DNA of 64,000 bases from Haplodiscus bocki (lineage: Eukaryota). The stretch's first letter is position 1. Every line of letters begins with the position of its first letter. The notes under the pieces were generated by a model. It was given only the letters and a program-made list of their open reading frames with translations. It did no database searches and was not told where the DNA came from. Shown here piece by piece: positions 22,850 through 58,470 of this stretch. The stretch covers positions 86,304,001-86,368,000 of the forward strand of contig OZ296654.1 in the NCBI GenBank assembly GCA_965655095.1, written 5' to 3'. Both the position numbers and the translations under genes were made by a program.

Positions 22850-24210
22850 TCACGCTCAAACGACTATTACGTTGAAAGTTTTTTTTTGTTCGGATGGACT
22901 GTGAACTTGAGCACAATTCCAGCCACAGCGACCAGACAAACTGTGGTGATCCAAATTTCGGTTAAACTGAGGGCGACCTTGACGTTTGTTGTCGGTCTCT
23001 AGTTCAGAGCGTTCCATTCTCAGCGTCACGTGCTTTCTCGCGGCATTCCGCTTGCTTCCGACCGAGCTTGTCACAGTAGAAACACTTCCCTTCGAATCTC
23101 TTCGTGTCTGGCATTTGTTGGTTGTGGTGTCGTTTTTGGTTTTCCATCACTTTTGGATGGAATGGTTGCGGCCTTGTCATTTGCGTGAAATGGTTGTACA
23201 GTTGACGTCTGTGCAGGAAGGCCTTGATTTCGTCGGAGCTAGCATCCTCCTTGTTGCTGTTCATGATATCCTGCTGGATCGATATTGGCAGCTTTCTAAA
23301 GAGGAAAGATCGTATGCACTGGCCCGCCTTCTCGGAATGCTTGTTCGGCGATGATATCTGGGCGCTGTGAGAAGTATGAAATGTTTCTGCGGTGGGATCG
23401 GATTTGGTTTGATCCCATTGAAAGCGCGCTTTTTCTTTGAGATCGTCTTTTGTAAATTTCTTTCGGAATTTCGTTAGGACGTCGTTTAAGTTCGTCCCCG
23501 TTGTCATCCTTAGTGCTTGATATAACTCAATTGCTTCCTTTCTGAGGAGACTTCGGAAGTACTGGAAATCACCTTCTTCCGGTAGTCTGTGGTTCAAGCG
23601 TCGCCAGCAGTTTTTTAGCAGGTGCTCGAACTTGTTGAAACTGCGCTTCGTTTCGCGGAACGTTGTCAATTGAGTCTGTAGTAATCTGGGGTTGTTCGTG
23701 TAAATTCTGCTTGGTAAGGTTGTAATGGCGTTGAGGTGGTGTTCCTACGAGGCTGCACTTTCGAGTGGCGTTGCGGGTCGAAAAAGTTGGTCGTAGTCTG
23801 GGTATGTCGCTTCTTCGTCTGTGTGGGGGCTGGTCATTGATCGTCTTCTCTGCCGGGTACGTTGAACTCCTGTCACCATGTCGGACTAAGGCATGGCCGT
23901 ACCGGAAATGGTACCAAGATCAGTCCTAGGGTATGGATTTGGACGCCAAGATGTGGTCTTTCTCTGTACCAGCCGAGTCAACTCTTCCATCTGGCTAGTT
24001 GGAGGAGCAATAAACCCTCCAATGTGTTCGCTGACGGCGTCTTGCGTCAGCTTTTGAAACCCTGGAACTTCTCCTTTGAAATTTTCCAATATAATTCTTT
24101 TCGCGATTTCTTCAGTACTACCGCCTTGGTTCATTATGCGTTCGTCTGACGTTTGATAGCATTTTCCGTTTCCAAGTTCTCTGTAGTCGGTGGAATGAAG
24201 CACGCAATTT
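22850..24210 (-). mobile_element. Ty3/Gypsy-like gag remnant and adjacent upstream ORF fragment
   Basis: Retrotransposon-gag-like QYFRSLLRKEAIELY...LTKFRKKF and a degenerate zinc knuckle CFYCDKLGRKQAEC; no LTR identified. Confidence 0.7.
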
Positions 24211-25859
24211 TCGAGACTTGAATTGTATTTCGATACTTTGATAAATCAGTGATTTTCAAAAGTTGCAAAAATTTGGCGAGTCTTAAAACACTGGTGTTGG
24301 AAAGCAATTTGAGGTAATTATCGTTCAGGTCTAGATCAAAAAAGCAACACTTTCTCAAAACGTAGTAATCCAGGCAAGCGCGAGCGTTGTTACAGATTGC
24401 GTTCATCGTATGTCGGTGCTCGGTGGATTCGCTTGGTCACGTGACCCTCTGGTGAGACTAATTCTTACCATTGGAGTTTTCTCACTGGTTTATTCTCAAT
24501 ATAAGTATTTAGTTAATGAAGTTGCGAAACGCAATTCAACCGCAACCGTGTGGGCTACCTTCACATGGCATGGCATCTATGCAAAATGATTGAAATAATC
24601 TTGCACAAATTGAATTTGGCTGAATAGATACGTAAAAGAACTAAAACAATTGAAAATGAAAGATTCAGCACAACTCTCACCGTTTTGGTAAGGTCTCAAT
24701 TTAAGCTCAGCTTTAAGAACAAGTTATTTCAATTTTCACAGGACATGATCGTTTCGTCTATATCTACATGTTTATCCGTATTTTAAAGTCAACTAGGTCC
24801 TGTTTCCAATGAATTCCAGTTTTCTTTGCTAAAGTGAGTATCAGAGCTCTATAAATAGTTGAGCTAGGTTAATACTGCAAGAATTCGATGGACGACTACG
24901 AAATTTTTTTTTGTCATTACAAACTGTTATCTATCAGTGACGTTGGCTCACGGTTTTCACCTTGTTGACGAAAACAGACGTACTTTTGCACAAACTGTCA
25001 GTCTATACGAGAGGTTTTCATCATTCGGATGGAAACTGAAGAACACTGAAATGCTTTTAAATCGCATAGTAGGAGGTTTACAGGTGTCGGATGTAAGCCG
25101 ATAAAGTTTGTTATCTCATTAAATCAATCCGTTGCTACTTACAACCTCGTAAAGCGACAGTACTTGTTCTCTGGTCTGTTGCATTCTACTCTGCGTTTTG
25201 TTTGGAATGAATTAAAGGAAGGTAACTTCCCTCAGACGTTTTTCGATGAAAAAAGTCATCCATCTCTTTTATTAGCCTTTTACTTTTGCCACTATAGAGC
25301 TACTTGTAGTGGCTTAGATTGTTCCCGTTGGAGCCTTCCGGTGTTTTTTTATGCTAGTTTTAGTTTTGTTGAGCCTTCATTGGAATTTGTCATTTTTCAT
25401 TGATTTTTTATAGCACTTTGTATATCGATGCATAGTGATGCTTTTATATGCTGAACGATACTTTCTACATAACACATATTATTGTTTACATATTACATAA
25501 ATCGCTGTCACAACGGGGAGAAAGGAAGTAATATAACAAACTCGAGTTTTTAGATCTTTGGCTACAGAAATGCATTGAGATCTTATTAAAGATTATGGCT
25601 TCATACCTAAAAAACATAACGTAAGTTTAAGGATATGTAGATGTGTCATCTTTCCTTAATGCGGGGCATGACACCAGTAGTAGCAGTAGCAGTTTTTGGC
25701 ATTTGGCCAGAGTCTTCTGGCGCAGAGATCTTCTAACTTTGTCGTCGCGTTCTTGAAAGCTGGCTAACTACGTTCTCCACATAGCACTGAGGAGCTCATT
25801 GTACTTGTCGCTGAAGTACGACCAAAAAATACGAAGTAGACGTTACTTTAGACCAGTAG

Positions 25860-26460
25860 GGTTAGTGTTGTCAATGGTTGTCGGCGGCGTTTTCACAGGG
25901 GCACCTGCACGACAGAATTTTTGTTCGTACTGGTGTTTTCGGGGTTAGGGATAGTCGTATCTCAACTCAATAGAGGATTGATTTTCCCGAGGGAAGTTTC
26001 TCAAACGAAGTTATCGATTACAATCGTAGTTATTAGAACCCGCCATACACTTAGAGAGAGTGGGCAGTTCTTGTAATTGCATGTCTACAGAGAGGGGGAA
26101 TTTTCTACTTCTGACAAAAAAACTTCTATACGTGTTGTTTTGGGCCGAGTGGACCCTTTTCAGCGATTATTTCTGGACCTTTGCAAAGTTTTTAAACTGT
26201 CGATATTAGCATACCAACAAGTGCTTCTGTAAAGTATGACGGGAATACTCATCAATTTGAATGGTTTTAACTTTGCCGGGAATCGTACGCAGGCAAGAAC
26301 TTAGTTTCAACAAAAAGAGAACACTGAGTGCTTTGCTGCAAGCTGACTTTTTTATGATCAGCTCGCTTTCGTCCATAAGGGATCAGCAAACTTAAGTCTC
26401 TTTGCAAAACTTGTTTCTCTTTTTTTCTCGTTGCCGGAGAAGAAAAACATTTTGTCGCTA
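25860..26460 (-). mobile_element. LINE-D 3' part (post-RT region and C-terminus), left flank of the array
   Basis: QRDLSLLI, IPVILYRSTCWY, PLS, and terminal ILSCRCPC at ~25895-25918 are collinear with the C-termini of LINE-A and LINE-B. Confidence 0.78.
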
Positions 26461-29400
26461 CTGCCAAAGTCAAATGCGGGCATTTTTCTATGTTCAGTGA
26501 TAAAATGTTTCGGTAGCTCGATCTTTCATCTTTTATTACGTGTTAAGTCTATCTGGAATTGCAGAGTAGATTTATTAATAGAAAGTTTTTTTGCAAACTG
26601 AGGGCATAACAATGGTCCGCACGTCTTCCAGTTGATTTGCAGGTCGATGATGTAAACAACAAAGAGTAGACTGACAAAAAAAGACCTTTAGGGTATGCCA
26701 ATTGTAACTAGCACTTCTTGTGAAAAGATTCCATGAACACCAACACGTTGTGTTCTCGTGTTCAGTTGGCTAAGTAGAAGCGTGACTATGTCAATTTTTT
26801 TCATTGAACACCCCTTCTGTAGAACTTTGCCAGCAGATTGCCGTGATTGACATTATCAAGAGCTTTTTCGTAATCTGTGTATTTTACATGAATTCATGAA
26901 TTTCGTCGTCAAAATTTAGGGAATTGTGCACTTGGTCGAGAAAAATTAGTAAGTGAGTAGCACAAAAACGTTGTTTTCGAAGTTAAAAAACGGGAATTCA
27001 CTGAACTATGGCTTTAGAAAAATGTACAAGTTTTTGAAAAGACAAAGGTCAAGATTTTTCGATATGATGCTCAAGAGGGAGCCTTGTCTTCAATTCTGTA
27101 TATGCGAGTTGAACTACTTTCTGAAAGTTGGACTAACAATAGAGATCATTCGATTAGTAGAAAAAACACCTGATTGCTTCATTTTGCATAAAAAATTGCC
27201 CAATGATTTGCTGAGATTTCTTGGACATCGTTTAAATAAGTTAGCGGGTAACTCATCCGGACCATTGCGTTACTTAATATCAAGACTCTCACATTTATGC
27301 CGAACTTGCTTTCAGAGGCGTTAAAATCGAGCAGGCAATTCTCAGAAATGCATTTTCCATTAGGATGAAATCTGTAGATACGGCAAAAAAAGACGCAAAG
27401 AGTTTAGAGAACAGGTCACTTTCCGACAATTTTTCAATCGCCTGATCATTTCTGTAAATTATAAAAACAGAAAAACGAGTTGGAGGAGCAATAATCCTTC
27501 TAATGTGTTCGTTGACGGCTAATTGAAAGGCGCAAAAACGTTGTTGTCGAAGTCAAAACGGGAATTCAGTGAACTATGGATTTAGAAAAAAGTACAGGTG
27601 AATAAAAAGACAACGCTCAAGAACTTTGAATATAATGCTCAAAAGATAGACTTGTCAATAATTCTCTACGTTCGAATGCAAACCTTTTCTGAAAGCTGAG
27701 CTAACAATAAAGTTCTTCCGACAAGTAGGGAAGACACCTTTTTGAATAATTTTGTATATTCAAGTGCCCAATGATTTGCTGAGAGTTCTTGCACATCCTT
27801 TGAATAAGTTAGCGGGTTACTCATCTGGAGCAGTGCCTTTCCCATTATCAAGACTCTCACATATTGGCTGAATTTGCTCTTCAGAGACGCTAAAATCGAG
27901 CAAAAACTTTTCAGAATTGTATTTTTATTTTAGGATGAAGTCTGTAGAAACGGCAAAAAAATCAAAGAATTTAGAGAACAGGTCATTTTGCGACATTAAA
28001 TCAATCGCAATTTCAAGTCCGTAAACTATTGAAATGGGAATGCGAGTTACCTTGTTAGCTACTGCCAAAGTCAAGAGCCGGTGTTTTCTTTTGTTCACTG
28101 ATGAATTTTTTTGGTCAGTCCATCTTTCATCTCTTTTTACGTGTTAAAACTATCTGGAATTGCCAAGTAGATTTCTTATTCAAAAAAACTTTTACAAACT
28201 CAGCGCATAACAATGGTCGGCAAGTCTTACAGTTGATTCGCATGTCGTTGGTGAAAACAACGAAGAGTAGACTGACAAAGATAGACCCTTGTTGTACGCC
28301 ACTTGTAACTAGCACTTCTTGTGAAAAGATTCCATGAACCCCAACATGCTGTGTTCTGGTGTTCAGTTGAGTAAAAGCGACCGTAACTAATGGAATACTT
28401 TTCCCCGAACACCCCTTCTGTGGAGCTTTTGCAGCAGAATGCCGTGATTGCTTTTGTCAAGAGCTTTTTCGTAGTCTGTGTAAACTACATGAAGTTCGTC
28501 GTCAAAATTCATGGGAATGTGCAATTGGTCGAGAGAAATTAGTAATTGAAAAGCGCAGGAACGTTGTTTTGAAGTCAAAACGGGACTTCATTGAACTATG
28601 GCTTTAAAAAAGTGTTCAGATTAATGAACAGACAACGCTCAAACTTTTTCGATATCATGCTCAAGAAAGAGACTTGTCTTTAATTCTCCACATTCAAGTT
28701 CAACAATTTTTTGAAAGTTGGACTAACAATGGAATGCTTCCTACAAAAAGGTGAGGCACATGTTTGTTTAATTTTGCAAAATAAATTGAACAATGATTTG
28801 CTGAGAGTTCTTGGACTTCGTTGAAATAAGTTACCGTGTAACTCATCTAGACCAGTGCCTTTCTTAATAACGAAACTCACAAATATATGCTGAATTTGCT
28901 CTTCAGAGACGTTAAAATCGAGCAAAAACTTCTCAGCAATGCATTTTTTGTTGGGATGAAGTCTGTAGATACGGACAAAATAGAAGCAGAAAATTTAGAG
29001 AACAGGTCATTTTGCGGCATTAAATCACTCGCAATTTCAATTCCGTAAACTAATGAAATCGGAAAACGAGTTAATTGGTCGCTACTGCCAAAGTCAAGTG
29101 CGGGCGTTTTTTTTGTTCAGTGATAAACTGTTTCGGTCGCTCCAGCTTTCATCTTTTGTTACGTGTTAAGTCTATCTGGAATTGCAAGGTAGAATTTTTA
29201 ATCGAAATAGTTTTTCCAGATTCAGCGCATAACACTGGTCGGCACGTCTTACAAATGATTCGCATGTCGTTGATATAAGCAACGATTAGTAGAGTGACAA
29301 AGATAGACTTTTTATTGTACGCCAGTTGTAACTAGCACTTCTTGTGAAAAGTTTCCATGAACCCTAACACGCTGTGTTCTGGTGTTCAGCTGGCTAAGTA

Positions 29401-32400
29401 GGCGCGTAAATATTTGAATACGTCTCCCCGAACACCCATTCTGTAGAGCGTTTCCAGCAGAACAACGCCGTGATTGACATTATCAAGGGCGTTTTCGCAG
29501 TCTGTGTAATTTACATGAATTCATGAATTTCGTCGTCAAAATTTAGGGAATTGTGCACTTGGTCGAGAAAAATTAGTAAGTGAATAGCACAAAAACGTTG
29601 TTTTCGAAGTCAAAACGGGAATTCACTGAACTATGGCTTTAGAAAAATGTACAAGTTTTTGAAAAGACAAAGGTCAAGATTTTCCGATATGATGCTCAAG
29701 AAGGAGCCTTGTCTTCAATTCTGTATATGCGAGTTGAACTACTTTCTGAAAGTTGGACTAACAATAGAGATCATTCGATTAGTAGAAAAGACACCTGATT
29801 GTTTCATTTTGCATAAAAAATTTCCCAATGATTTGCTGAGATTTCTTGGACATCGTTTAAATAAGTTAGCGGGTAACTCATCCGGACCATTGCCTTACTT
29901 AATATCAAGACTCTCACATTTATGCCGAACTTGCTTTCAGAGGCGTTAAAATCGAGCAGGCAATTCTCAGAAATGCATTTTCCATTAGGATGAAATCTGT
30001 AGATACGGCAAAAAAAGACGCAAAGAGTTTAGAGAACAGGTCACTTTCCGACAATATTTCAATCGCCTGATCAATTCTGTAAATTATAAAAATGGAAAAA
30101 CGAGTTGGAGGAGCAATAAACCTTCTAATGTGTTCGTTGACGGCTAATTGTATAGCGCAAAAACGTTGTTGTCGAAGTCAAAACGGGAATTCAGTGAACT
30201 ATGGATTTAGAAAAAAGTACAGGTGAATAAAAAGACAACGCTCAAGAACTTTGAATATAATGCTCAAAAGATAGACTTGTCAATAATTCTCTACGTTCGA
30301 ATGCAAACCTTTTCTGAAAGCTGAGCTAACAATAAAGTTCTTCCGACAAGTAGGGAAGACACCTTTTTGAATAATTTTGTATATTCAAGTGCCCAATGAT
30401 TTGCTGAGAGTTCTTGCACATCCTTTGAATAAGTTAGCGGGTTACTCATCTGGAGCAGTGCCTTTCCCATTATCAAGACTCTCACATATTGGCTGAATTT
30501 GCTCTTCAGAGACGCTAAAATCGAGCAAAAACTTTTCAGAATTGTATTTTTATTTTAGGATGAAGTCTGTAGAAACGGCAAAAAAATCAAAGAATTTAGA
30601 GAACAGGTCATTTTGCGACATTAAATCAATCGCAATTTCAAGTCCGTAAACTATTGAAATGGGAATGCGAGTTACCTTGTTAGCTACTGCCAAAGTCAAG
30701 AGCCGGTGTTTTCTTTTGTTCACTGATGAATTTTTTTGGTCAGTCCATCTTTCATCTCTTTTTACGTGTTAAAACTATCTGGAATTGCCAAGTAGATTTC
30801 TTATTCAAAAAAAATTTACAAACTCAGCGCATAACAATGGTCGGCAGGTCTTACAGTTGATTCGCATGTCGTTGATGAAACCAACGAAGAGTAGACTGAC
30901 AAAGATAGACCCTTGTTGTACGCCACTTGTAACTAGCACTTCTTGTGAAAAGATTCCATGAACCCCAACATGTTGTGTTCTCGTGTTCAGTTGGCTAAGT
31001 AGGAGCGTCACTATTGGAATACTTTTCCCCGGAAAACCCCATCTGTAGAGCTTTTCCGGCAGAATGCCGCGATTAGTATTATCAAAACCCTTTTCGTAGT
31101 CTGTGTAAACTACATGAAGTTCGTCGTCAAAATTCATAGAAATGTGCAATTGGTCGAGAAAAATTAGTAATTGAAAAGCGCAGGAACGTTGTTTTGAAGT
31201 CAAAACGGACTTCATTGAACTATGGCTTTAGAAAAGTGTTCAGATTAATGAAAAGACAACGCTCAAAGTTTTTTGATATCATGCTCAAGAGAGAGACTTG
31301 TCTTTAATTCTCCACATTCAAGTTCAACAATTTTCTGAAAACTGGACTAACAATGGAATTCTTCCTACAAGTAGGTGAGGCACATGTTTGTTTAATTTTG
31401 CAAAATAAATTGCACAATGATTTGCTGAGAGTTCTTGGACTTCGTTGAAATAAGTTACCGTGTAACTCATCTGGACCAGTGCCTTTCTTAATAACGAAAC
31501 TCACAATCATATGCTGAATTTGCTCTTCAGAGACGTTAAAATCGAGCAAAAACTTCTCAGCAATGCATTTTTTGTTGGGATGAAGTTTGTAGATACGGAA
31601 AAAAAAGAAGCAGAAAATTTAGAGAACAGGTCATTTTGCGGCATTAAATCACTCGCAATTTCAATTCCGTAAACTATTGAAATCGGAAAACGAGTTAATT
31701 GGTCGCTACTGCCAAAGTCAAGTGCGGGCGTTTTTTTTGTTCAGTGATAAACTGTTTCGGTCGCTCCAGCTTTCATCTTTTGTTACGTGTTAAGTCTATC
31801 TGGAATTGCAAGGTAGAATTTTTAATCGAAATAGTTTTTCCAGATTCAGCGCATAACACTGGTCGGCACGTGTTACAAATGATTCGCATGTCGTTGATAT
31901 AAGCAACGATTAGTAGAGTGACAAAGATAGACTTTTTATTGTACGCCAGTTGTAACTAGCACTTCTTGTGAAAAGTTTCCATGAACCCTAACACGCTGTG
32001 TTCTGGTGTTCAGCTGGCTAAGTAGGCGCGTAAATATTTGAATACGTCTCCCCGAACACCCATTCTGTAGAGCGTTTCCAGCAGAACAACGCCGTGATCG
32101 ACATTATCAAGGGCTTTTTCGCAGTCTGTGTAATTTACATGAATTCATGAATTTCGTCGTCAAAATTTAGGGAATTGTGCACTTGGTCGAGAAAAATTAG
32201 TAAGTGAATAGCACAAAAACGTTGTTTTCGAAGTCAAAACGGGAATTCACTGAACTATGGCTTTAGAAAAATGTACAAGTTTTTGAAAAGACAAAGGTCA
32301 AGATTTTTCGATATGATGCTCAAGAGGGAGCCTTGTCTTCAATTCTGTATATGCGAGTTGAACTACTTTCTGAAAGTTGGACTAACAATAGAGATCATTC

Positions 32401-35400
32401 GATTAGTAGAAAAAACACCTGATTGCTTCATTTTGCATAAAAAATTGCCCAATGATTTGCTGAGATTTCTTGGACATCGTTTAAATAAGTTAGCGGGTAA
32501 CTCATCCGGACCATTGCGTTACTTAATATCAAGACTCTCACATTTATGCCGAACTTGCTTTCAGAGGCGTTAAAATCGAGCAGGCAATTCTCAGAAATGC
32601 ATTTTCCATTAGGATGAAATCTGTAGATACGGCAAAAAAAGACGCAAAGAGTTTAGAGAACAGGTCACTTTCCGACAATTTTTCAATCGCCTGATCATTT
32701 CTGTAAATTATAAAAACGGAAAAACGAGTTGGAGGAGCAATAATCCTTCTAATGTGTTCGTTGACGGCTAATTGAAAGGCGCAAAAACGTTGTTGTCGAA
32801 GTCAAAACGGGAATTCGGTGAACTATGGATTTAGGAAAAAGTACAGGTGAATGAAAAGACAACGCTCAAGAATTTTCAATATAATGCTGAAAAGATAGAC
32901 TTGTCAATAATTCTCTACATTCGAGTGCAAAACTTTTCTGAAAGTTGAGCTAACAATAAAGTTCATCCGACAAGTAGGGAAGACACCTATTTGATTAATT
33001 TTGTATATTGAAGTGCCCAATGATTTGCTGAGAGTTTTGCACATCCTTTGAATAAGTTAGCGGGTTACTCATCTGGACCAGTGCCTTTCCCATTATCAAG
33101 ACTCTCACATATTGGCTGAATTTGCTCTTCAGAGACGCTAAAATCGAGCAAAAACTTTTCAGAATTGTATTTTTATTTTAGGATGAAGTCTGTAGAAACG
33201 GCAAAAAAATCAAAGAATTTAGAGAACAGGTCATTTTGCGACATTAAATCACTCGCAATTTCAATTCCGTAAACTATTGAAATGGGAATGCGAGTTAACT
33301 TGTTAGCTACTGCCAAAGTCAAGAGCCGGCGTTTTCTTTTGTTCACTGATGAATTGTTTTGGTCAGTCCATCTTTCATCTCTTTTTACGTGTTAAGACTA
33401 TCTGGAATTGCCAAGTAGATTTTTTATTCAAAAAAAATTTTACAAACTCAGCGCATAATATTGGTCGGCAGGTCTTACAGTTGATTCGCATGTCGTTGAT
33501 GAAACCAACGAAGAGTAGACTGACAAAGATAGACCTTTGTTGTACGCCACTTGTAACTAGCACTTCTTGTGAAAAGATTCCATGAACCCCAACATGCTGT
33601 GTTCTCGTGTTCAGTTGGCTAAGTAGGAGCGTCACTATTGGAATACTTTTCCCCGGAAAACCCCATCTGTAGAGCTTTTCCGGCAGAATGCCGCGATTAA
33701 TATCATCAAAACCCTTTTCTTAGTCTGTGTAAACTACATGGAGTTCGTCGTCAAAATTCATGGAAATGTGCAATTGGTCGAGAGAGATTAGTAATGGAAA
33801 AGCGCAGGAACGTTGTTTTGAAGTCAAAACGGGACTTCCTTAAACTATGGCTTTAGAAAAGTGTTCAGATTCATGAAAAGACAACGCTCAAAGTTTTTCG
33901 ATATCATGCTCAAGAAAGAGACTTGTCTTTAATTCTCCACATTCAAGTTCAACAATTTTCTGAAAGTTGGACTAACAATGGAATTCTTCCTACAAGTAGG
34001 TGAGGCACATGTTTGTTTAATTTTGCAAAAATAAATTGCACAATGATTTGCTGAGAGTTCTTGGACTTCGTTGAAATAAGTTACCGTGTAACTCATCTGG
34101 ACCAGTGCCTTTCTTAATAACGAAACTCACAAAGATATGCTGAATTTGCTCTTCAGAGACGTTAAAATCGAGCAAAAACTTCTCAGCAATGCATTTTTTG
34201 TAGGGATGAAGTCTGTAGATACGGACAAAATAGAAGCAGAAAATTTAGAGAACAGGTCATTTTGCGGCAAGAAATCACTCGCAATTTCAATTCCGTAAAC
34301 TATTGAAATCGGAAATCGAGTTAATTGGTCGCTACTGCCAAAGTCAAGTGCGGGCGTTTTTTTTGTTCAGTGATAAACTGTTTCGGTCGCTCGAGCTTTC
34401 ATTTTTTGTTACGTGTTAAGTCTATCTGGAATTGCAAGGTAGATTTTTTAATCGAAAGAATTTTTCCAGATTCAGCGCCTAACACTGTTCGGCACGTCTT
34501 ACAAATGATTCGCATGTCGTTGATATAAACAACGATTAGTAGAGTGACAAAGATAGACTTTTTATTGTACGCCAGTTGTAACTAGCACTTCTTGTGAAAA
34601 GTTTCCATGAACCCTAACACGCTGTGTTCTGGTGTTCAGCTGGCTAAGTAGGCGCGTAAATATTTGAATACGTCTCCCCGAACACCCATTCTGTAGAGCG
34701 TTTCCAGCAGAGCAACGCCGTGATTGACATTATCAAGGGCGTTTTCGCAGTCTGTGTAATTTACATGAATTCATGAATTTCGTCGTCAAAATTTAGGGAA
34801 TTGTGCACTTGGTCGAGAAAAATTAGTAATTGAATAGCACAAAAACGTTGTTTTCGAAGTCAAAACGGGAATTCACTGAACTATGGCTTTAGAAAAATGT
34901 ACAGGTTTTTGAAAAGACAAAGGTCAAGATTATTCGATATGATGCTCAAGAGAGAGCCTTGTCTTCATTTCTGTATATTCGAGTTTAACAAATTTCTGAA
35001 AGTTGGACTAACAATAGAGATCATTCGATTAGTAGAAAAGACACTTGATTGTTTCATTTTGCATTAAAAATTGCCCATAGATTTGCTGAAATTTCTTGGA
35101 CATCGTTTAAATAAGTTAGCGGGTAACTCATCCGGACCAGTGCCTTACTTAATATCAAGACTCTCACATATTGGCTGAATTTGCTCTTCAGAGACGCTAA
35201 AATCGAGCAAAAACTTTTCAGATTTGTATTTTTATTCTGGGATGAAGTCTGTAGAAACGGCAAAAAAATCAAAGAATTTAGAGAACAGGTCATTTTGCGA
35301 CATTAAATCACTCGCATTTTCAATTCCGTAAAATATTGAAATGGGAATGCGAGTTAACTTGTTAGCTACTGGCAAAATCAAGAGCCGGCGTTTTCTTTTG

Positions 35401-38400
35401 TTCACTGATGAATTGTTTTGGTCAGTCCGTCTTTCATCTCTTTTTACGTGTTAAATCTATCTGGAATCGCAAGGTAGATTTCCTAATCGAAATAAGTTTT
35501 GCAAATTCAGTGCGTAACACAGGTCAGCACATCTCACAGTTGATTCGCATGTCATTGATATATACAACGAAAAGTAGACTGACAAAGATAGACCCTTGTT
35601 GTACGCCACTTGTAACTAGCACTTCTTGTGAAAAGATTCCATGAACCCCAACATGCTGTGTTCTCGTGTTCAGTTGGCTAAGTAGGAGCGTCACTATTGG
35701 AATACTTTTCCCCCGAAAACCCCATCTGTAGAGCTTTTCCGACAGAATGCCGCGATTATAAATATCAAAACCCTTTTCGTAGTCTGTGTAAACTACATGA
35801 CATTCATCGTCAAAATTCATGGAAACATGCAATTGGTCGAGAAAAATTAGTAATTGAAAAGCGCAAAAGCGTTGTTGTTGAAGTCAAAACGGGAATTCAT
35901 TGAACTACGGCTTTAGAAAAGTGTTCAGATTAATGAAAAGACAACGCTCAAAATGTTTCGATATCATGCTCAAGAAAGAGACTTGTCTTTAATTCTCCAC
36001 ATTCAAGTTCAACAACTTTCTGAAAGTTGGACTAACAACAGAGATCATCCGATTAGTTGAAAAGACACCTGTTTGTTTCATTTTGCATAATAAATTGCCC
36101 AATGATTTGCTGAGAGCTCTTGGACATCGTTTAAATAAGTTAGCGGGTATTTCATTTTGATCAGTGCCTCACCTAATATCAAGACACTCACATATATGTC
36201 GAATTTGCTTTCAGAGACGTTAAAATCGAGCAGACACTTCTCAGAAATGCATTTTTCTTTTGGGATGAAATCTGTAGATACGGCAAAAACAGAAGCAAAG
36301 AACTTAGAGAACAAGTGACTTTGCGACATTAAGTCAGTCGCAATTTCAATTCTGTAAAATATTGAAATGGGAATACGAGTTAATTTGTCGCTACTGCCAA
36401 AGCCAAGGGCGGGCGTTTTCTTTCGTTCACTGATAAATTGTTTCGGTCACTCCATCTTTCATCTTTTACTACGTGTTAAATCTATCTGGAATCGCAAGGT
36501 AGATTTCTTAATCGAAATGAGTTTTGCAAATTTAGTGCGTAACAATGGCCGGCACGTCTTAGAGTTGATTCGCATATCTTTGATATACACAACGAAAAGT
36601 AGACTGACCAGGTTAGACCCTTTTTGTACGCCACTTCTAACTAGCACTTCTTGTGAAAAGATTCCATGAACCCCAACATGCTGTGTTCTCGTGTTCAGTT
36701 GGCTAAGTAGGAGCGTCACTATTGGAATACTTTTCCCCGGAAAACCCCATCTGTAGAGCTTTTCCGGCAGAATGCCGCTATTAGTATTATCAAAACCCTT
36801 TTCGTAGTCTGTGTAAACTACATGAAGTTCGTCGTCAAAATTCATGGGAATGTGCAATTGGTCGAGAGAAATTAGTAATTGAAAAGCGCAGGAACGTTGT
36901 TTTGAAGTCAAAACGGGACTTCATTGAACTATGGCTTTAAAAAAGTGTTCAGATTAAGGAACAGACAACGCTCAAAGTTTTTCGATATCATGCTCAAGAA
37001 AGAGACTTGTCTTTAATTCTCCACATTCAAGTTCAACAATTTTCTGAAAGTTGGACTAACAATGGAATTCTTCCTACAAGTAGGTGAGGCACATGTTTGT
37101 TTAATTTTGCAAAATAAATTGCCCAATAATTTGCTGGAGTTCTTGGACTTCGTTGAAATAAGTTACCGTGTAACTCATCTGGACCAGTGCCTTTCTTAAT
37201 AACGAAACTCACAAATATATGCTGAATTTGCTCTTCAGAGACGTCAAAATCGAGCAGAAACTTCTCAGAAATGCAATTTTCCGTTTGTATGAAGTCTTTA
37301 GGTACGGAAAAAAAGAAAGAATTTACGGAACAGGTCATTTTGCGACAAAAAATCAGTCGCAATTTCAGTTCTGTAAAACATTGAAATGGGAAAACTAGTT
37401 ACTTTGTCCCTACTGCCCCAGTCAAATGCGGGCGTTTTCTTTCGGTCACTGATAAATTGTTTCGGTCACTCCATTTTACACCTTTTACTAGGTGTTACGT
37501 CTATGTATAACTGCTAAGTAGATTTTTTATTCAAAAAAAATTTCACAAACTCAGCGCATAACAATGGTCGGCAGGTCTTACAGTTGATTCGCATGTCGTT
37601 GATGAAAACAACGAAGAGTAGACTGACAAACATAGACCCTTGTTGTACGCCACTTGTAACTTGCACTTCTTGTGAAAAGATTCCATGAACCCCAACAAGC
37701 TGCGTTCTGGTGTTCAGTTGGGTAAAAGCGACCGTAACTAATGGAATATTTTTCCCCGAACACCCCTTCTGTGGAGCTTTTGCAGCAGAATGCCGTGATT
37801 GCTTTTATCAAGAGCTTTTTCGTAGTCTGTGTAAACTACATGACATTCATCGTCAAAATTCATGGAAACGTGCAATTGGTCGAGAAAAATTAGTAATTGA
37901 AAAGCGCAGGAACGTTGTTGTTGAAGTCAAAACGGGAATTCATTGAACTACGGCTTTAGAAAAGTGTTCAGATTAATGAAAAGACAACGCTCAAAATTTT
38001 TCGATATCATGCTCAAGAAAGAGACTTGTCTTTAAATCTCCACATTCAAGTTCAACAATTTTCTGAAAGTTGGACTAACAATAGAGATCATCCGATTAGT
38101 TGAAAAGACACCTGTTTGTTTCATTTTGCATAATAATTTGCCCAATGATTTGCTGAGAGCTCTTGGACATCGTTTAAATAAGTTAGCGGGTATTTCATTT
38201 TGAGCAGTTCCTCACCTAATATCAAGACACTCACATATATGTCGAATTTGCTTTCAGAGACGTTAAAATCGAGCAGACACTTCTCAGAAATGCATTTTTC
38301 CTTTGGGATGAAATCTGTAGATACGGCAAAAACAGAAGCAAAGAACTTAGAGAACAGGTGACTCTGCGACATTAAGTCAGTCGCAATTTCAATTCTGTAA

Positions 38401-41400
38401 AATATTGAAATGGGAATACGAGTTAATTTGTCGCTACTGCCAAAGCCAAGGGCGGGCGTTTTTTTTCGTTCACTGATAAATTGTTTCGGTTTCTCCATCT
38501 TTCATCTTTTACTACGTGTTAAATCTATCTGGAATCGCAAGGTAGATTTCCTAATCGAAATAAGTTTTGTAAATTCAGTGCGTAACAATGGCCGGCACGT
38601 CTTAGAGTTGATTCGCATATCTTTGATATACACAACGAAAAGTAGACTGACCAGGATAGACCCTTTTTGTACGCCACTTCTAACTAACACTTCTTGTGAA
38701 AAGACTCCATGAACCCGAACTTGCTGTGTTCTGGTGTTCAGTTGGCTAAGTAGGAGCGTCACTATTGGAATACGTTTCCCCGGAAAACCCCATCTGTAGA
38801 GCTTTTCCGGCAGAATGCCGCGATTAATATTATCAAAACCCTTTTCGTAGTCTGTGTAAACTACATGAAGTTCGTCGTCAAAATTCATAGAAATGTGCAA
38901 TTGGTCGAGAGAAATTAGTAATTGAAAAGCGTAGGAACGTTGTTTTGAAGTCAAAACGGGACTTCATTGAACTATGGCTTTAGAAAAGTGTTCAGATTAA
39001 TGAAAAGACAACGCTCAAAGTTTTTCGATATCATGCTCAAGAAAGAGACTTGTCTTCAATTCTCCACATTCAAGTTCAACAATTTTCTGAAAGTTGGACT
39101 AACAATGGAATTCTTCCTACAAGTAGGTGAGGCACATGTTTGTTTAATTTTGCAAAATAAATTGCCCAATGATTTGCTGAGAGTTCTTGGACTTCGTTGA
39201 AATAAGTTACCGTGTAACTCATCTGGACCAGTGCCTTTCTTAGAAACGAAACTCACACATATATGCCGAATTTGCACTTCAGAGACGTTAAAATCGAGCA
39301 GAAACTTCTCAGCAATGCATTTTTCATTGGGATGAAGTCTGTAGATACGGAAAGAATAGAAGCAGAAAATTTAGAGAACAGGTCATTTTGCGACATTAAA
39401 TCAGTCGCAATTTCAATTCCGTAAACTTTTGAAATGGGAATACAAGTTAATTGGTCGCTACTGCCAAAGTCAAGTGCGGGCGTTTTTTTTTCTCAGTGAT
39501 AAACTGTTTCGGTCGCTCCAGCTTTCATCTTTTGTTACGTGTTAAGTCTATCTGGAATTGCAAGGTAGATTTTTTAATCGAATAAATTTTTCCAGATTCA
39601 GCCTATAACACTGGTCAGCACATCTCACAGTTGATTCGCATGTCGTACATATATACAACGAAAAGTAGACTGACCAGGATAGACCCTTGTTGTTCGCCAC
39701 TTGTAACTAGCACTTTTTGTGAAAAGATTCCATGAACCCCAACATGCTGTGTTCTGGTGTTCAGTTGGGTAAAAGCGACGTAACTAATGGAAAACTTTTC
39801 CCCGAACACCCCTTCTGTGGAGCTTTTGCAGCAAAAAGCCGTGATTGCTTTTGTCAAGAGCTTTTTCGTAGTCTGTGTAAACTACATGACATTCGTCGTC
39901 AAAATTCATGGAAACGTGCAATTGGTCGAGAAAAATTAGTAACTGAAAAGCGCAAGAACGTTGTTGTTGAAGCCAAAACGGGAATTCATTGAACCACGGC
40001 TTTAGAAAAGTGTTCAGATTAATGAAAAGACAACGCTCAAAATTTTTCGATATCATGCTCAAGAAAGAGACTTGTCTTTAATTCTCCACATTCAAGTTCA
40101 ACAATTTTCTGAAAGTTGGACTAACAATGGAATTCTTCCTACAAGTAAGTGAGGCACATGTTTGTTTAATTTTGCAAAATAAATTGCACAATGATTTGCT
40201 GAGATTTCTTGGACTTCGTTGAAATAAGTTACCGTGTAACTCATCTGGACCAGTGCCTTTCTTAATAACGAAACTCACAAATATATGCTGAATTTGCTCT
40301 TCAGAGACGTCAAAATCGAGCAGAAACTTCTCAGAAAAGCAATTTTCCGTTTGTATGAAGTCTTTAGTTACGGAAAAAAAAGAAAGAATATACGGAACGG
40401 GTCATTTTGCGACAAAAAATCAGTCGCAATTTCAGTTCTGTAAAACATTGAAATGGGAAAACTAGTTACTTTGTCCCTACTGCCCCAGTCAAATGCGGGC
40501 GTTTTCTTTCGGTCACTGATAAATTGTTTCGGTCACTCCATTTTACACCTTTTACTAGGTGTTACGTCTATGTATAACTGCTAAGTAGATTTTTTATTCA
40601 AAAAAAATTTCACAAACTCAGCGCATAACAATGGTCGGCAGGTCTTACAGTTGATTCGCATGTCGTTGATGAAAACAACGAAGAGTAGACTGACAAAGAT
40701 AGACCCTTGTTGTACGCCACTTGTAACTTGCACTTCTTGTGAAAAGATTCCATGAACCCCAACAAGCTGCGTTCTGGTGTTCAGTTGGGTAAAAGCGACC
40801 GTAACTAATGGAATATTTTTCCCCGAACACCCCTTCTGTGGAGCTTTTGCAGCAGAATGCCGTGATTGCTTTTATCAAGAGCTTTTTCGTAGTCTGTGTA
40901 AACTACATGACATTCATCGTCAAAATTCATGGAAACGTGCAATTGGTCGAGAAAAATTAGTAATTGAAAAGCGCAGGAACGTTGTTGTTGAAGTCAAAAC
41001 GGGAATTCATTGAACTACTGCTTTAGAAAAGTGTTCAGATTAATGAAAAGACAACGCTCAAAATTTTTCGATATCATGCTCAAGAAAGAGACTTGTCTTT
41101 AAATCTCCACATTCAAGTTCAACAATTTTCTGAAAGTTGGACTAACAATAGAGATCATCCGATTAGTTGAAAAGACACCTGTTTGTTTCATTTTGCATAA
41201 TAATTTGCCCAATGATTTGCTGAGAGCTCTTGGACATCGTTTAAATAAGTTAGCGGGTATTTCATTTTGAGCAGTTCCTCACCTAATATCAAGACACTCA
41301 CATATATGTCGAATTTGCTTTCAGAGACGTTAAAATCGAGCAGACACTTCTCAGAAATGCATTTTTCCTTTGGGATGAAATCTGTAGATACGGCAAAAAC

Positions 41401-44400
41401 AGAAGCAAAGAACTTAGAGAACAGGTGACTCTGCGACATTAAGTCAGTCGCAATTTCAATTCTGTAAAATATTGAAATGGGAATACGAGTTAATTTGTCG
41501 CTACTGCCAAAGCCAAGGGCGGGCGTTTTTTTTCGTTCACTGATAAATTGTTTCGGTTTCTCCATCTTTCATCTTTTACTACGTGTTAAATCTATCTGGA
41601 ATCGCAAGGTAGATTTCCTAATCGAAATAAGTTTTGCAAATTCAGTGCGTAACAATGGCCGGCACGTCTTAGAGTTGATTCGCATATCTTTGATATACAC
41701 AACGAAAAGTAGACTGACCAGGATAGACCCTTTTTGTACGCCACTTCTAACTAGCACTTCTTGTGAAAAGATTCCATGAACCCCAACATGCTGTGCTCTC
41801 ATGTTCAGTTGGCTAAGTAGGAGCGTCACTATCGGAATACTTTTCCCCGGAAAACCCCATCTGTAGAGCTTTTCCGGCAGAATGCCGCGATTAATATTAT
41901 CAAAACCCTTTTCGTAGTCTGTGTAAACTACATGAAGTTCGTCGTCAAAATTCATAGAAATATGCAATTGGTCGAGAGAAATTAGTAATTGAAAAGTGTA
42001 GGAACGTTGTTTTGAAGTCAAAACGGGACTTCATTGAACTATGGCTTTAGAAAAGTGTTCAGATTATTGAAAAGACAACGCTCAAAGTTTTTCGATATCA
42101 TGCTCAAGAAAGAGACTTGTCTTTAATTCTCCACATTCAAGTTCAACAATTTTCTGAAAGTTGGACTAACAATGGAATTCTTCCTACAAGTAGGTGAGGC
42201 ACATGTTTGTTTAATTTTGCAAAATAAATTGCCCAATGATTTGCTGAGAGTTCTTGGACTTCGTTGAAATAAGTTACCGTGTAACTCATCTGGACCAGTG
42301 CCTTTCTTAGAAACGAAACTCACACATATATGCCGAATTTGCTCTTCAGAGACGTTAAAATCGAGCAGAAACTTCTCAGCAATGCTTTTTTCGTTGGGAT
42401 GAAGTCTGTAGATACGGAAAGAATAGAAGCAGAAAATTTAGAGAACAGGCCATTTTGCGACATTAAATCAGTCGCATATTCAATTCCGTAAACTATTGAA
42501 ATGGGAATGCGAGTTAACTTGTTAGCTACTGCCAAAGTCAAGAGCCGACGTTTTTTTTTTTAATGATGAATTGTTTTGGTCAGTCCATCTTTCATCTCTT
42601 TTTACGTGTTGAAACTATCTGGAATTGCCAAGTAGATTTTTAATCAAAAAAAATTTACAAACTCAGCGCATAACAATGGTCGGCAGGCCTTACAGTTGAT
42701 TCGCATGTCGTTGATGAAAACAACGAAGAGTAGACTGACAAAGATAGACCCTTGCTGTACGCCACTTGTAACTAGCACTTCTTGTGAAAAGATTCCATGA
42801 ACCCCAACATGCTGTGTTCTCATGTTCAGTTGGCTAAGTAGGAGCGTCACTATTGAAATACTTTTCCCCAGAAAACCCCATCTGTAGAGCTTTTCGGGCA
42901 GAATGCCGCGATTAATATTATCAAAACCCTTTTCGTAGTCTGTGTAAACTACATGAAGTTCGTCGTCAAAATTCATGGAAATGTGCAATTGGTCGAGAGA
43001 AATTAGTAATTGAAAAGCGCAGGAACGTTGTTTTGAAGTCAAAACGGGACTTCATTGAACTATGGCTTTAAAAAAGTGTTCAGATTAATGAACAGACAAC
43101 GCTCAAAGTTTTTCGATATCATGCTCAAGAAAGAGGCTTGTCTTTAATTCTCCACATTCAAGTTCAACAATTTTCTGAAAGTTGGACTAACAATGGAATT
43201 CTTCCTACAAGTAGGTGAGGCACATGTTTGTTTAATTTCGCAAACTAAATTGCCCAATGATTTGCTGAGAGTTCTTGGACTTCGTTGAAATAAGTTACCG
43301 TGTAACTCATCTGGACCAGTGCCTTTCTTAATAACGAAACTCACAAAGATATGCTGAATTTGCTCTTCAGAGACGTTAAAATCGAGCAAAAATTTCTCAG
43401 CATTGCATTTTTTGTCGGGATGAAGTCTGTAGATACGGAAAAAATAGAAGCAGAAATTTTAGAGAACAGGTCATTTTGCGACATTAAATCAGTCGCAATT
43501 TCTATTCCGTAAACTTTTGAAATGGGAATACAAGTTAATTGGTCGCTACTGCCAAAGTTAAGTGCGGTCGTTTTTTTTGTTCAGTGATAAACTGTTTCGG
43601 TCGCTCCAGCTTTCATCTTTTGTTACGTGTTAAGTCTATCTGGAATTGCAAGGTAGATTTTTTAATCGAAATAATTTTTCCAGATTCAGCGCATAACACT
43701 GGTCGGCACGTCTTACAAATGATTCGCATGTCGTTGATATAAGCAACGATTAGTAGCGTGACAAAGATAGACTTTTTATTGTACGCCAGTTGTAACTAGC
43801 ACTTCTTGTGAAAAGTTTCCATGAACCCTAACACGCTGTGTTCTGGTGTTCAGCTGGCTAAGTAGGTGCGTAAATATTTGAATACGTCTCCCCGAACACC
43901 CAATCTGTAGAGCGTTTCCAGCAGAACAACGCCGTGATTGACATTATCAAGGGCTTTTTCGCAGTCTGTGTAATTTACATGAATTCATGAATTTCGTCGT
44001 CAAAATTTAGGGAATTGTGCACTTGTTCGAGAAAAATTGGTAATTGAATAGCACTAAAACGTTGTTTTCGAAGTTAAAACGGGAATTCACTGAACTATGG
44101 CATTAGAAAAATGTACAGGTTTTTGAAAAGACAAAGCTCAAGATTTTTCGATATGATGCTCAGGAGAGAGCCTTGTCTTCAATTCTGTATATGCGAGTTC
44201 AACTATTTTCTGAAAGTTGGACTAACAATAGAAATCATTCGATTAGTAGAAAAAACACCTGATTGCTTCATTTTGCATAAAAAATTGCCCAATGATTTGC
44301 TGAGATTTCTTGGACATCGTTTAAATAAGTTAGCGGGTAACTCATCCGGACCAGTGCCTTACTAAATATCAAGACTCTCACATTTAAGCCGAATTTGCTT

Positions 44401-56400: not shown

Positions 56401-58470
56401 ATGGGAATACGAGTTAAGTTGTCTCTACTGCCAACGTCAAGTCCGGGCGTTTTCTTTTGTTCACTGATAAATTGTTGCGGTCACTCCATCTTTCATCTTT
56501 TCTTACTTGTTAAGTCTATCTGGAATTGGAAGGTAGACTTTTTAATCGAAAGATATTTCGCAAAGTCAGCGCATGACAATGCTCAGCCTGTCTTACAGTT
56601 GGTTCGCATGTCGTTGATATAAACACCGAAGAGTAGACTGTCAAAAAGAGACCCTTTTTGTACGCCACTTCTAACTAGCACTTCTTGTGAAAAGATTCCA
56701 TGAACCCCAACTTGCTGTGTTCTGGTGTTCAGTTGGCTAAGTACGAGCGTAACTAACTGAATACTTTTCCCCGAACACCTCTTCTGTAGAGCTTTTCCAG
56801 CAAATGCCGTGATTGACAATACCAAGAGCTTTTTCGCAATCTGTGTAACCTACATGATTTTCGTCGTCAAATTTCAAGCAAATGTTCGCTTGGTCGTGAA
56901 AATATAGTGATTGAGTAGCGCAGAAACGTTGTTTTTGAAGTCAAAACGGGATTGCAGTGAACTCGGGCTTTAGAAATTTGTACAGGTTAATGAAAAGACA
57001 ACTCTCAAGAATTTTCGTTATGATGCTCAAGAGAAAGACTTGTCTTTAGTTCCCTACATTCGAGTTCAACCCTTTTCTGCAAGTTGACCTAGCAAAAGAG
57101 TTCTTCCGAGAAAAAAGGAAGACACCTGTTTGTTTAATTTTGCATAATAATTTGCACAATGATTTGCTGAGAGCTCTGGGACATCGTTTAAACAAGTTAG
57201 CGGGTAACTCATCTGAACCAGTGCCTTTCCTAATATCAAAACTCTCACATATACGCTGAATTTGCTCTTCAGAGACGTTAGAATAGTGCAAAAACTTCTG
57301 AGAAATGCACTCCTCCATTGGTATGAAGTCTGTAGATACGGCAAAAACAGAAGCAAACATTTTAGAGATTCGGTCACTTTGCGACGTTAAGTCAGTCGCA
57401 GTTTCAGTTCTGTAAAATATTGGAAAGGGAATATGAGTTAGTTGGTCGCCACTGCCAAAGTCAAGTGCGGGCGTTGTCTTTTGTTCACTGTTAAATTGTT
57501 TCGGTCAATCCATCTTTCAACTTTTTCTGCGTATGAAGTCTATCTGGAATTGCAAGGTAGATTTTTTAATCGAAATAGGTTTTGCACACTCAGTGCATAA
57601 CAATGGTCAGAACGTCTTACAGTTGATTCGCATGTCGTGGATATAAACAGCGAAGAGTAGACTGACAAAGATAGATCCTTGTTGTACGCCACTTGTAACT
57701 AGCACTTCTCGTGAAAAGATTCAATGAACCCCAACCCGCTGTTATGGTGTTCAGTTGGCTAAGAACGACCGTAACTAACGGAATACTTTTCCCCGAACAC
57801 TCCTTCTGTAGAGCTTTTGCAGCAGAATGCCGTGATTGATTTTATCAAGAGCTTTTTCGTAATCTGTGTAAATTACATGAATTTCGTCGTCAAAATTTAG
57901 GGAAATGTGCACTTGGTCGTGAAAATTTAGTGATTGAAAAACGCAAAAACGTTATTTTCGAGGTCAAAACATGAATTCCCTGAACTATGGCTTTACAAAT
58001 GTGTACAGGTTGATAAAAGCACACCGCTCAAGATTTTTCAAGTTGATGCTCAAGAGAGAGGCTGGTCTTCCATTCTCTACGTTCGAGTTCAACCCTTTTC
58101 TGAAAGCTGAACCAACAATAGAGATCATCCGATAAGTAGGAAAGACACCAGTTTGTTTCATTTTGTATACTAAATTGCCGAATGATTTGCTGTGAGCTCT
58201 TGGACATCGTTTAAATAAGTTAGCGGGTAACTCAACTGGACCAGTGCCTTTCCTAATATCCTGACTTTCACATATAGGCTGAATTTGCTCTTCAGAGACG
58301 TTAAAATCGAGCAGAAATTTCTCATAAAATCATTTTCCCCTGGGGATGAAGTCTGTAGATACGGCAAAAACAGAAGCAAAGAATTTAGAGAACAGGTCAC
58401 TTTGCGACATTAAGTAAGTCGCACTTTCAATTCTGTAAAATTTTGAATTGGGATTACGAGTTAATTTGAA
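26460..58470 (-). repeat. ~32-kb tandem array of LINE RT-derived units (29 x ~1.02 kb + 4 x ~0.58 kb)
   Basis: Landmark ACTGCCAAAGTC (or a close variant) recurs at ~26460, 28061, 29084, 30686, 31708, 33309, 34334, 35368, 36393, 37412, 38436, 39460, 40479, 41503, 42528, 43548, 45148, 46169, 47196, 48216, 49241, 50264, 51286, 52318, 53340, 54370, 55393, 56427, 57451; full units carry degenerate KGTGPDEL, YTDYEKA(L/F)D and SGVQQGS...LLF..(F/Y)INDM. Confidence 0.97.

What the first reader, a model, noticed from the sequence alone, without database searches (positions are those of the whole stretch)
27478..27519. Array units carry a 42-bp piece matching the neighbouring gag element
Seen: the four short units begin with AGTTGGAGGAGCAATAAWCCTTCTAATGTGTTCGTTGACGGC (27478, 30103, 32727, 44567), which replaces ~480 bp of the unit. 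The 30103 copy matches 23997-24038 at 39/42 bases, same orientation, all differences C to T, with AGTT microhomology at the left join. Inference: one templated insertion (template switch or polymerase-theta-type repair) from an unrelated element ~3.5 kb away, later amplified. It shows the array can take up and multiply foreign TE sequence, but it is a single event.
Basis: partly seen in the sequence, partly recalled or inferred. Interest (0 to 1): 0.72.

Follow-up and report, generated by a model that had tools for sequence, protein, structure and literature searches.

The report
Repair filler copied from neighbouring LTR
A 42-base scrap of a nearby retrotransposon's long terminal repeat was copied into one broken-and-rejoined spot of a LINE-derived tandem array and then multiplied to four copies as the array grew; it is a clean fossil of a well-known kind of DNA repair scar, not a new system.

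Summary
The 42-mer sits at 27478, 30103, 32727 and 44567 and matches 23997-24038 at 38-39 of 42 bases in the same orientation. No such match is expected by chance.

- The array (26451-58466, about 31 units of ~1,024 bp) is an in-situ tandem amplification of an internal segment of one 5'-truncated LINE-like element.
- The donor stretch is not gag coding sequence. It lies in the 1,795-bp 5' LTR (23879-25673, minus strand) of a decayed LTR retrotransposon that directly abuts the LINE's tail.

Raw mismatch counts tie the neighbouring LTR with four distant copies. Two variants (G5, G28) settle it: G28 occurs in none of 96 other genomic copies.

The junction has 4 bp of microhomology (AGTT) on the left and a blunt join on the right, and about 495 bp of a unit is missing. 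This fits microhomology-primed copying of 38 nt from a template at least 3.4 kb away during break or fork repair. The junction later spread by array dynamics; the four copies differ by 2.9-5.8%.

Polarised against other copies, two of the three "C to T" differences are probably T to C changes in the donor.

There is no second insert, no other array of this unit and no RNA data. This is a single ordinary event.

The parts
27478..27519 (+). Insert copy 1 (T at position 18). The first 4 nt, AGTT, are shared with the array unit, so 38-42 nt are foreign.
30103..30144 (+). Insert copy 2 (A at position 18; 39/42 to the donor)
32727..32768 (+). Insert copy 3 (T at position 18)
44567..44608 (+). Insert copy 4 (A at position 18), 11.8 kb from copy 3, in a different unit context: [6][6][5']f[3][6][9]
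23997..24038 (+). Donor tract inside the LTR. It is the only genomic copy sharing G5 and G28 with the array inserts.
23879..25673 (-). 5' LTR (1,795 bp) of a decayed LTR retrotransposon. It reads TGTC...GACA. Solo copies elsewhere are flanked by 5-bp target-site duplications. There is no second LTR in the window.
23861..23878 (-). PBS-like sequence starting TGG immediately inside the LTR
   Evidence: anatomy only; no tRNA match was tested
23004..23669 (-). Degenerate gag-like ORF with a CX2CX4(R)X4C knuckle remnant and a weak DUF1759 hit. It is contiguous with the LTR in many other copies.
25674..26450 (-). Left arm (3' part, with a TAG-type microsatellite tail at 25674-25692) of the LINE-like parent element that hosts the array
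26451..58466 (+). Tandem array of about 31 units of ~1,024 bp, made from a 1,023-bp internal segment of the parent element. The unit-unit junction shows TTTG microhomology. It is the only such array in the assembly.
58467..58966 (-). Right arm of the parent element. Other copies continue further right, so this copy is 5'-truncated.
29577..30102 (+). Truncated (526-bp) type-5 unit preceding an insert. Equivalents lie at about 26960-27477, 32201-32726 and 44041-44566. They are 95-98% identical to each other and 88.5% identical to the nearest full unit (34827-35850).
27478..35350 (+). Three tandem copies of the 2,625-bp higher-order repeat (insert + 2 full units + half unit). The last copy ends in a full type-5 unit.

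Best explanation
The insert is a single microhomology-primed templated ('filler') insertion made while a break or collapsed fork inside the tandem array was repaired. A 3' end of the top strand ending ...CGAGTT annealed by its last 4 nt (AGTT) to the complementary AGTT in the LTR that lies a few kb upstream on the same chromosome. A polymerase copied 38 nt. The end then dissociated and was joined without microhomology to another array end at the start of a unit. The net result was either loss of about 0.5 unit or a tandem duplication of 2.5 units carrying the filler at its joint. Unequal exchange, conversion or segmental duplication within the array then multiplied the junction to four copies. 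Shown here: the junction anatomy, the donor identity, the single origin and the later amplification. Inferred: the order of strand events, the polymerase, and deletion versus duplication.
For: The match is 39/42 with 0 expected by chance. Homology ends sharply on both sides, and the tract is foreign both to the unit and to 30 parent-element copies. There is 4-bp microhomology on the left only; the chance of 4 bp or more at a random join is 0.016. This asymmetry fits priming from the left end followed by end joining on the right. Among 101 genomic matches to the 33-nt core, G at position 28 is found only in the neighbouring LTR and the four inserts, and G5 in about 9 others. So the donor is the nearest of at least 1,486 candidate family copies, in the same orientation, which points to a proximity-dependent DNA-level copy. 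All four junctions are identical, and the flanking blocks differ by 2.9-5.8% against 12-20% between unit types and 7% (3/42, 95% CI 1.5-19.5%) between insert and donor. This gives a coherent order: array, then event, then amplification. The junction is present in contigs of 4 runs from 2 samples.
Against: Classic Pol-theta/SD-MMEJ templates lie within about 20 bp of the break (PMC2943611), whereas here the template is 3.4-20.5 kb away in present coordinates. MMBIR-type switching usually shows microhomology at each switch, and the right join has none. A two-step history gives the same sequence. The left breakpoint lies only 2-6 bp from the array's founding unit-unit junction (about 1.3% by chance); the model does not predict this. 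The element's missing 3' LTR, or a lost twin copy, could have been the template instead of this LTR.
Confidence: 0.65

Rival explanations
1. A two-step rearrangement. First, a tandem duplication of a segment running from LTR position 23997 to the breakpoint in an array unit, joined at AGTT. Later, a blunt deletion from 24039 to the start of a unit removed everything except 42 bp.
For: This gives exactly the observed junctions: 4-bp microhomology on one side and a blunt join on the other. It also gives the same donor identity, orientation and proximity. Arrays of this kind rearrange often.
Against: It needs two independent events whose end points happen to leave only 42 bp. No intermediate is seen in the assembly: the 42-mer occurs only at the four identical junctions. 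Contigs from the two samples show no intermediate either.
Confidence: 0.15
2. A retroelement-derived fragment. Either a new family copy or solo LTR inserted in the array and was later whittled down to 42 bp, or a cDNA fragment (for example strong-stop DNA covering R-U5 of the LTR) was captured at a break.
For: The tract lies 119-160 nt upstream of the PBS edge of the LTR, a region expected in early reverse-transcription products (established retroviral/LTR biology; my knowledge). The family is very abundant.
Against: The insert carries G28, seen in no other genomic copy, and G5, seen in about 9 of 96, so it derives from this particular decayed copy. A diffusible cDNA or a new transposition landing within 3.4-20 kb of its own source in a 1.5-Gb genome would be a large coincidence. 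The tree of 33 LTRs is star-like with long end branches, and nearly all sampled copies lack open frames, which indicates an old burst. No TSD or LTR end is present at the junction.
Confidence: 0.1
3. Systematic capture: the array, or its junction site, repeatedly takes up foreign TE pieces and amplifies them, for example as a source of small RNAs.
For: One foreign TE piece was taken up and multiplied four-fold. The breakpoint sits at an inverted repeat created by the unit-unit junction, which could be a recurrent weak point.
Against: All other units are 1,018-1,035 bp long with no indel above 8 bp. All four inserts descend from a single event. This is the only array of the unit in the assembly. 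No RNA run holds the region.
Confidence: 0.03
4. Chance similarity or an assembly artefact.
For: None found.
Against: None of 100 shuffles gave a match. The four copies sit in flanks that have diverged 3-6%. Independent contigs from 2 samples contain the junction.
Confidence: 0.01

Closest known systems
Templated insertions of alternative end joining (SD-MMEJ / polymerase-theta-mediated end joining; PMC2943611, PMC4912351, PMC7165422)
   Same: A short tract copied from an existing sequence, primed by a few bases of microhomology, combined with a deletion, and with an apparent blunt join on the other side.
   Different: Templates in those studies lie within about 20 bp of the break and tracts are mostly under 30 nt. 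Here 38 nt were copied from at least 3.4 kb away. The enzyme is unknown.
MMBIR / FoSTeS template switching (PMC8421209; Hastings et al. 2009 and Lee et al. 2007 from my own knowledge)
   Same: A switch to a nearby template in cis, in direct orientation, over kb-scale distance, giving a short templated insertion at a deletion or duplication joint.
   Different: Microhomology is seen at only one of the two switches, and there is no further complexity.
Filler DNA at plant NHEJ and T-DNA junctions (PMC10923293, PMC5217109; Gorbunova & Levy 1997 from my own knowledge)
   Same: Fillers of tens of bases copied from sequences up to kb away on the same molecule, with microhomology at the priming end.
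   Different: Those are experimental or somatic events. Here the scar is germ-line fixed and then amplified by array dynamics.
TE-derived satellites and higher-order repeats (review PMC12628747; PMC7403614)
   Same: A tandem array born from an internal TE segment with a microhomology junction (TTTG), later organised into higher-order repeats by unequal exchange.
   Different: It is a single 32-kb locus, not a dispersed satellite family. One higher-order variant is marked by a foreign filler.
Capture of retrotransposon cDNA at chromosome breaks (Teng et al. 1996; Moore & Haber 1996; from my own knowledge)
   Same: A short piece of LTR-retrotransposon sequence sits at a repaired break.
   Different: The donor is the adjacent decayed copy, identified by its rare variants. 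This argues for copying from chromosomal DNA in cis rather than from a diffusible cDNA.

Membership tests
Templated (filler) insertion at a non-homologous junction | The inserted tract matches a sequence elsewhere in the genome far beyond chance | tested here: met
   39/42; 0 matches in 100 shuffles
Templated (filler) insertion at a non-homologous junction | Homology to the template ends abruptly at both joins, and the tract is foreign to the recipient | tested here: met
Templated (filler) insertion at a non-homologous junction | Microhomology at the priming join | tested here: met
   AGTT, 4 bp; P(4 bp or more) = 0.016 at a random join
Templated (filler) insertion at a non-homologous junction | An identifiable template copy, in cis | tested here: met
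   G28 is unique to the neighbour and the inserts among 101 matches. The neighbour is the nearest of at least 1,486 candidate family copies.
SD-MMEJ / Pol-theta end joining in the strict sense | Template within a few tens of bp of the break | tested here: not met
   Template at least 3,440 bp from the nearest junction
SD-MMEJ / Pol-theta end joining in the strict sense | Dependence on polymerase theta | not testable with these tools
   Needs genetics in the organism
MMBIR / FoSTeS | Microhomology at every template switch | tested here: inconclusive
   Left 4 bp, right 0 bp
LTR retrotransposon (donor element) | LTR with TG...CA ends and short terminal inverted repeat | tested here: met
   TGTC...GACA
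LTR retrotransposon (donor element) | Target-site duplications around copies | tested here: met
   5-bp TSDs around at least 9 solo copies
LTR retrotransposon (donor element) | PBS next to the 5' LTR, with gag/pol inside | tested here: inconclusive
   A TGG-starting sequence lies next to the LTR. Gag-like evidence is sub-threshold only: DUF1759 E = 0.0014, zf-CCHC E = 0.0044. No pol domain was found, and no second LTR is in the window.
Non-LTR (LINE-like) retrotransposon (array's parent) | Conserved 3' end with a simple-repeat tail and variable 5' truncation | tested here: met
   A TAG-type tail at the left end in the window and in other copies. Truncations fall on the other side.
Non-LTR (LINE-like) retrotransposon (array's parent) | Reverse transcriptase / endonuclease ORF in full-length members | not tested
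piRNA-cluster-like TE trap | Many independent TE fragments captured, and small RNAs produced | tested here: not met
   One event only. No RNA data exist, so the RNA part is untestable.

The most novel reading that the evidence does not exclude
The inverted repeat that every unit-unit junction creates (GCGACATTAA...TTAATTTGTCGC) is a recurrent fragile site. It caused both the array's founding duplication and the later break. The three same-strand C/T differences are a deamination footprint of the single-stranded repair intermediate. The locus would then be a natural fossil of break-induced, error-prone synthesis, and the array a device that amplifies whatever filler it captures.
Probability: 0.06. 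Interest if true: 0.55.

Novelty: new member of a known kind. Interest (0 to 1): 0.25.

Why it matters
This is a tidy, datable natural example of a long-range (at least 3.4 kb) templated filler insertion. The exact donor copy can be identified among more than a thousand relatives, and the scar has been multiplied by tandem-array dynamics. It is useful in three ways. It marks the history of the array: one origin, then three local copies and one distal copy. It shows that raw mismatch counts can mislead about the donor and about the direction of mutation unless they are polarised against other family copies. It is one data point on how far templates can lie from a break in germ-line repair. It reveals no new mechanism or function.

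Tried and rejected
1. 5'-truncated retrotransposed unit with an RT template jump. I considered this when the dispersed copies appeared to start at the insert's position. I rejected it for three reasons. The conserved flanks show that the unit is an internal segment of a larger element. The element is minus-oriented, with its tail on the left. The units arose by DNA-level tandem duplication.
2. Gag element and array parent as one composite TE. Rejected: the parent's left terminus is at about 25676 in many loci, which have unrelated upstream DNA.
3. Donor tract as gag coding sequence. Rejected: the family boundary is at 23879, the element has TG...CA ends, and solo copies have TSDs. ORF 23886-24203 has no Pfam hit.
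4. CpG deamination or RIP-like decay as the cause of the C/T differences. None of the three sites is a CpG. CpG observed/expected is about 1.0 in the array and the LTR.
5. Simple one-step tandem duplication of 2.5 units as the sole origin of the left cluster. The last copy's full type-5 unit is only 88.5% identical to the truncated ones, whereas its other two units are about 96-97% identical to theirs. Extra exchange steps are therefore needed.
6. TRF did not see the array, because its period limit is 500.
7. A fuzzy-regex script timed out.
9. The search of earlier findings returned nothing for this place.
10. Hairpins near the breakpoints are only moderately better than shuffles (z = -2.3 and -2.2). 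I treat them as a curiosity.

Full report
**1. Observation**

The 42-mer occurs at 27478, 30103, 32727 and 44567 on the + strand. A 39/42 match lies at 23997-24038 in the same orientation. No match was found in 100 shuffles of the window. The copies at 27478 and 32727 have T at insert position 18, and the other two copies and the donor have A. Genome-wide (1.5 Gb; the window is C7:86304001-86368000), the 42-mer with up to 3 mismatches occurs only at these five places and in four distant copies of the same repeat family.

**2. What the array is**

- A self-comparison shows a base period of about 1,024 bp from 26451 to 58466, about 31 units.
- Elsewhere in the genome the unit occurs only as single copies with sharp, recurrent ends. 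Their flanks are conserved between loci and match the window on both sides of the array, at 25676-26450 and 58467-58966.
- The array is therefore an in-situ tandem amplification of a 1,023-bp internal segment of one copy of a dispersed element. The founding unit-unit joint (...GAGTTAATTTG|TCGC...) shows TTTG microhomology.
- That parent element carries a TAG-type microsatellite tail at its left end. Its copies usually keep that end and lose the other, and other copies run on beyond 58966.
- The diagnostic unit-unit junction occurs 16 times in the genome at up to 3 mismatches, all inside this array. There is no other array to compare.

**3. What the donor is**

- The family that contains the 42-mer matches the window only from 23879 to 25673/4.
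- In the element's sense (minus strand) this 1,795-bp unit reads TGTC...GACA and is followed at once by a TGG-starting PBS-like sequence.
- At least nine separate copies elsewhere are flanked by 5-bp target-site duplications.
- In many other copies it is contiguous with the gag-like region 22956-23878.
- It is therefore the 5' LTR of a minus-strand LTR retrotransposon. The far more numerous LTR-only copies are solo LTRs (at least 1,486 first-look candidates).
- The donor tract is LTR positions 119-160 counted from the internal edge. ORF 23886-24203, which overlaps it, has no family match.
- The 'gag' label rests on weak evidence: DUF1759 at E = 0.0014, zf-CCHC at E = 0.0044 in a relative, and a visible knuckle remnant.
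- No second LTR is in the window.
- Only one of the 29 sampled copies has an open frame of 200 aa or more. A tree of 33 LTRs is star-like with long end branches, and the neighbour has the longest, 0.18 against a median of 0.088. This is an old, decayed family.
- The LTR's outer end (25673) directly abuts the LINE-like element's tail (25674).
- I built no consensus and repaired no frame.

**4. Which copy was the template**

By raw mismatches the neighbour (3) ties with four distant copies (3 each). Site by site, across 33 aligned LTRs and 96 further matches to the 33-nt core:

| Insert position | Array | Neighbour | Other copies |
|---|---|---|---|
| 5 | G | G | G in about 9 of 96 |
| 28 | G | G | G in none of 96 |
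| 24 | T | C | T in nearly all |
| 35 | T | C | T in nearly all |
| 21 | T | C | C in most |

- The neighbour, or a lost twin such as the element's missing 3' LTR, is therefore the template lineage.
- It is also the nearest family copy to the array, out of more than a thousand. This argues for a proximity-dependent copy from chromosomal DNA.
- The most parsimonious polarity is two T>C changes in the donor after the event and one C>T in the array before the four copies split.
- The alternative is three C>T changes in the insert, for instance deamination of a single-stranded intermediate. It requires two of the three hits among the tract's 10 cytosines to restore the family-majority base by coincidence (8/120 = 6.7%). 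I give this alternative roughly 30%.
- It gains some weight from the fact that three same-strand C/T differences are mildly unusual. C/T is 16% of differences among the junction blocks, transitions are 51%, and the chance that all three are transitions is 0.13.
- CpG observed/expected is about 1.0 and none of the three sites is a CpG, so methylation decay is not involved.

**5. Junction anatomy**

- Left join: intact units read ...CGAGTTAAT... and the donor reads ...CTAGTTGGA..., giving 4 bp of microhomology. The chance of 4 bp or more at a random join is 0.016.
- Right join: units read ...ATTAG|TAATTG and the donor continues GGC|GTCTTG, so there is no microhomology.
- About 495-498 bp of a unit is absent.
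- The asymmetry fits priming by the top-strand 3' end on the left, synthesis of 38 nt rightwards, and end joining on the right.
- Because the recipient is periodic, the same joint can be read as a loss of about 0.5 unit or as the joint of a 2.5-unit tandem duplication.
- Unit typing gives the pattern (3, 6, 5'-filler) x3 then (3, 6, 5-full). That last full type-5 unit is only 88.5% identical to the truncated ones, while the truncated ones are 95-98% identical to each other. The junction therefore arose once, in an array that already had 3-unit higher-order structure, and then spread.
- The fourth copy sits in a different context, [6][6][5']f[3][6][9].
- Blocks of 1.6 kb around the four junctions differ by 2.9-5.8%. 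The insert differs from the donor by 7% (95% CI 1.5-19.5%). Unit types differ by 12-20%.
- This gives the order: array formation, then the filler event, then amplification.

**6. Independent data**

Four public runs (two samples, one study) hold the stretch. Their short contigs bridge the left junction in both samples, and the second sample shows both position-18 variants. The first sample may be the one the assembly was made from. No RNA run holds the stretch, so expression and small RNAs could not be assessed.

**7. Comparison with what is known**

- The event belongs to the well-described class of templated filler insertions at non-homologous joints.
- It departs from the SD-MMEJ / Pol-theta picture, where templates lie within about 20 bp of the break (PMC2943611; PMC4912351; PMC7165422). 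Here the template is 3.4-20.5 kb away in present coordinates.
- It departs from textbook MMBIR (PMC8421209) in having one blunt join.
- It resembles plant 'filler DNA' and kb-range template switches.
- The array itself is a standard TE-derived tandem array with higher-order repeats (PMC12628747, PMC7403614).
- Nothing indicates systematic capture. No other unit has an indel above 8 bp and there is no other array.

**8. Unexplained**

- The left breakpoint lies 2-6 bp from the founding unit-unit joint, which has about a 1.3% chance of happening at random.
- That joint creates an inverted repeat whose 3' arm contains the breakpoint. The DNA fold is moderately better than shuffles (z = -2.3, 3 of 200).
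- The copied tract ends 2 nt past the first arm of a 7-bp-stem inverted repeat in the donor (z = -2.2).
- Both are suggestive of structure-prone sites but are not established.

**Verdict**

This is a single, ordinary repair scar that has been nicely preserved and amplified.

Noticed in passing
window 25673/25674: The outer end of the LTR (…GACA in + coordinates) directly abuts the microsatellite tail of the LINE-like element that hosts the array. Two unrelated minus-strand retroelements lie end to end with no spacer. Which inserted first is unknown.
   Followed up: partly
window 36323-36391 (and every unit-unit junction): The tandem joint creates an inverted repeat, GCGACATTAA ... TTAATTTGTCGC. 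The filler's left breakpoint falls inside its 3' arm, 2-6 bp from the founding joint (DNA fold z = -2.3).
   Followed up: partly
window 24030-24058: The donor has a 7-bp-stem inverted repeat, GCTGACG-N8-CGTCAGC. The copied tract stops 2 nt after its first arm. The neighbour-specific C at insert position 35 completes the stem.
   Followed up: partly
window 22951-22956: Homology of the gag-like internal region to other family copies stops sharply here (query 52-57). The local element is interrupted or truncated at this point. No pol domains were found further left.
   Followed up: no
window 21954-22262 (-): A 102-aa ORF has a PHD-finger match (E = 9.5e-7, above the Pfam cutoff). It lies inside the stretch I first took for retroelement interior.
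   Followed up: no
window 11829-13322 (+) and 14900-15478 (-): Reverse-transcriptase (RVT_1) ORFs of other retroelements lie here. An N run at 13380-13515 sits between them and was left untouched.
   Followed up: no
window 27495, 30120, 32744, 44584: Insert position 18 alternates T, A, T, A along the array, although the flanking blocks do not pair up the same way (2.9-3.8% among the first three). This hints at exchange in a two-repeat register, at conversion, or at a parallel change.
   Followed up: no
window 9660-9927: A small 68/135-bp tandem repeat (4 and 2 copies, 86-88% matches), unrelated to the finding.
   Followed up: no
array 26451-58466: The substitution spectrum among the four junction blocks is strand-asymmetric (A/G 40 versus C/T 19 of 116 biallelic sites). 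CpG observed/expected is about 1.0 throughout, so there is no sign of methylation-driven decay in this TE-rich region.
   Followed up: no
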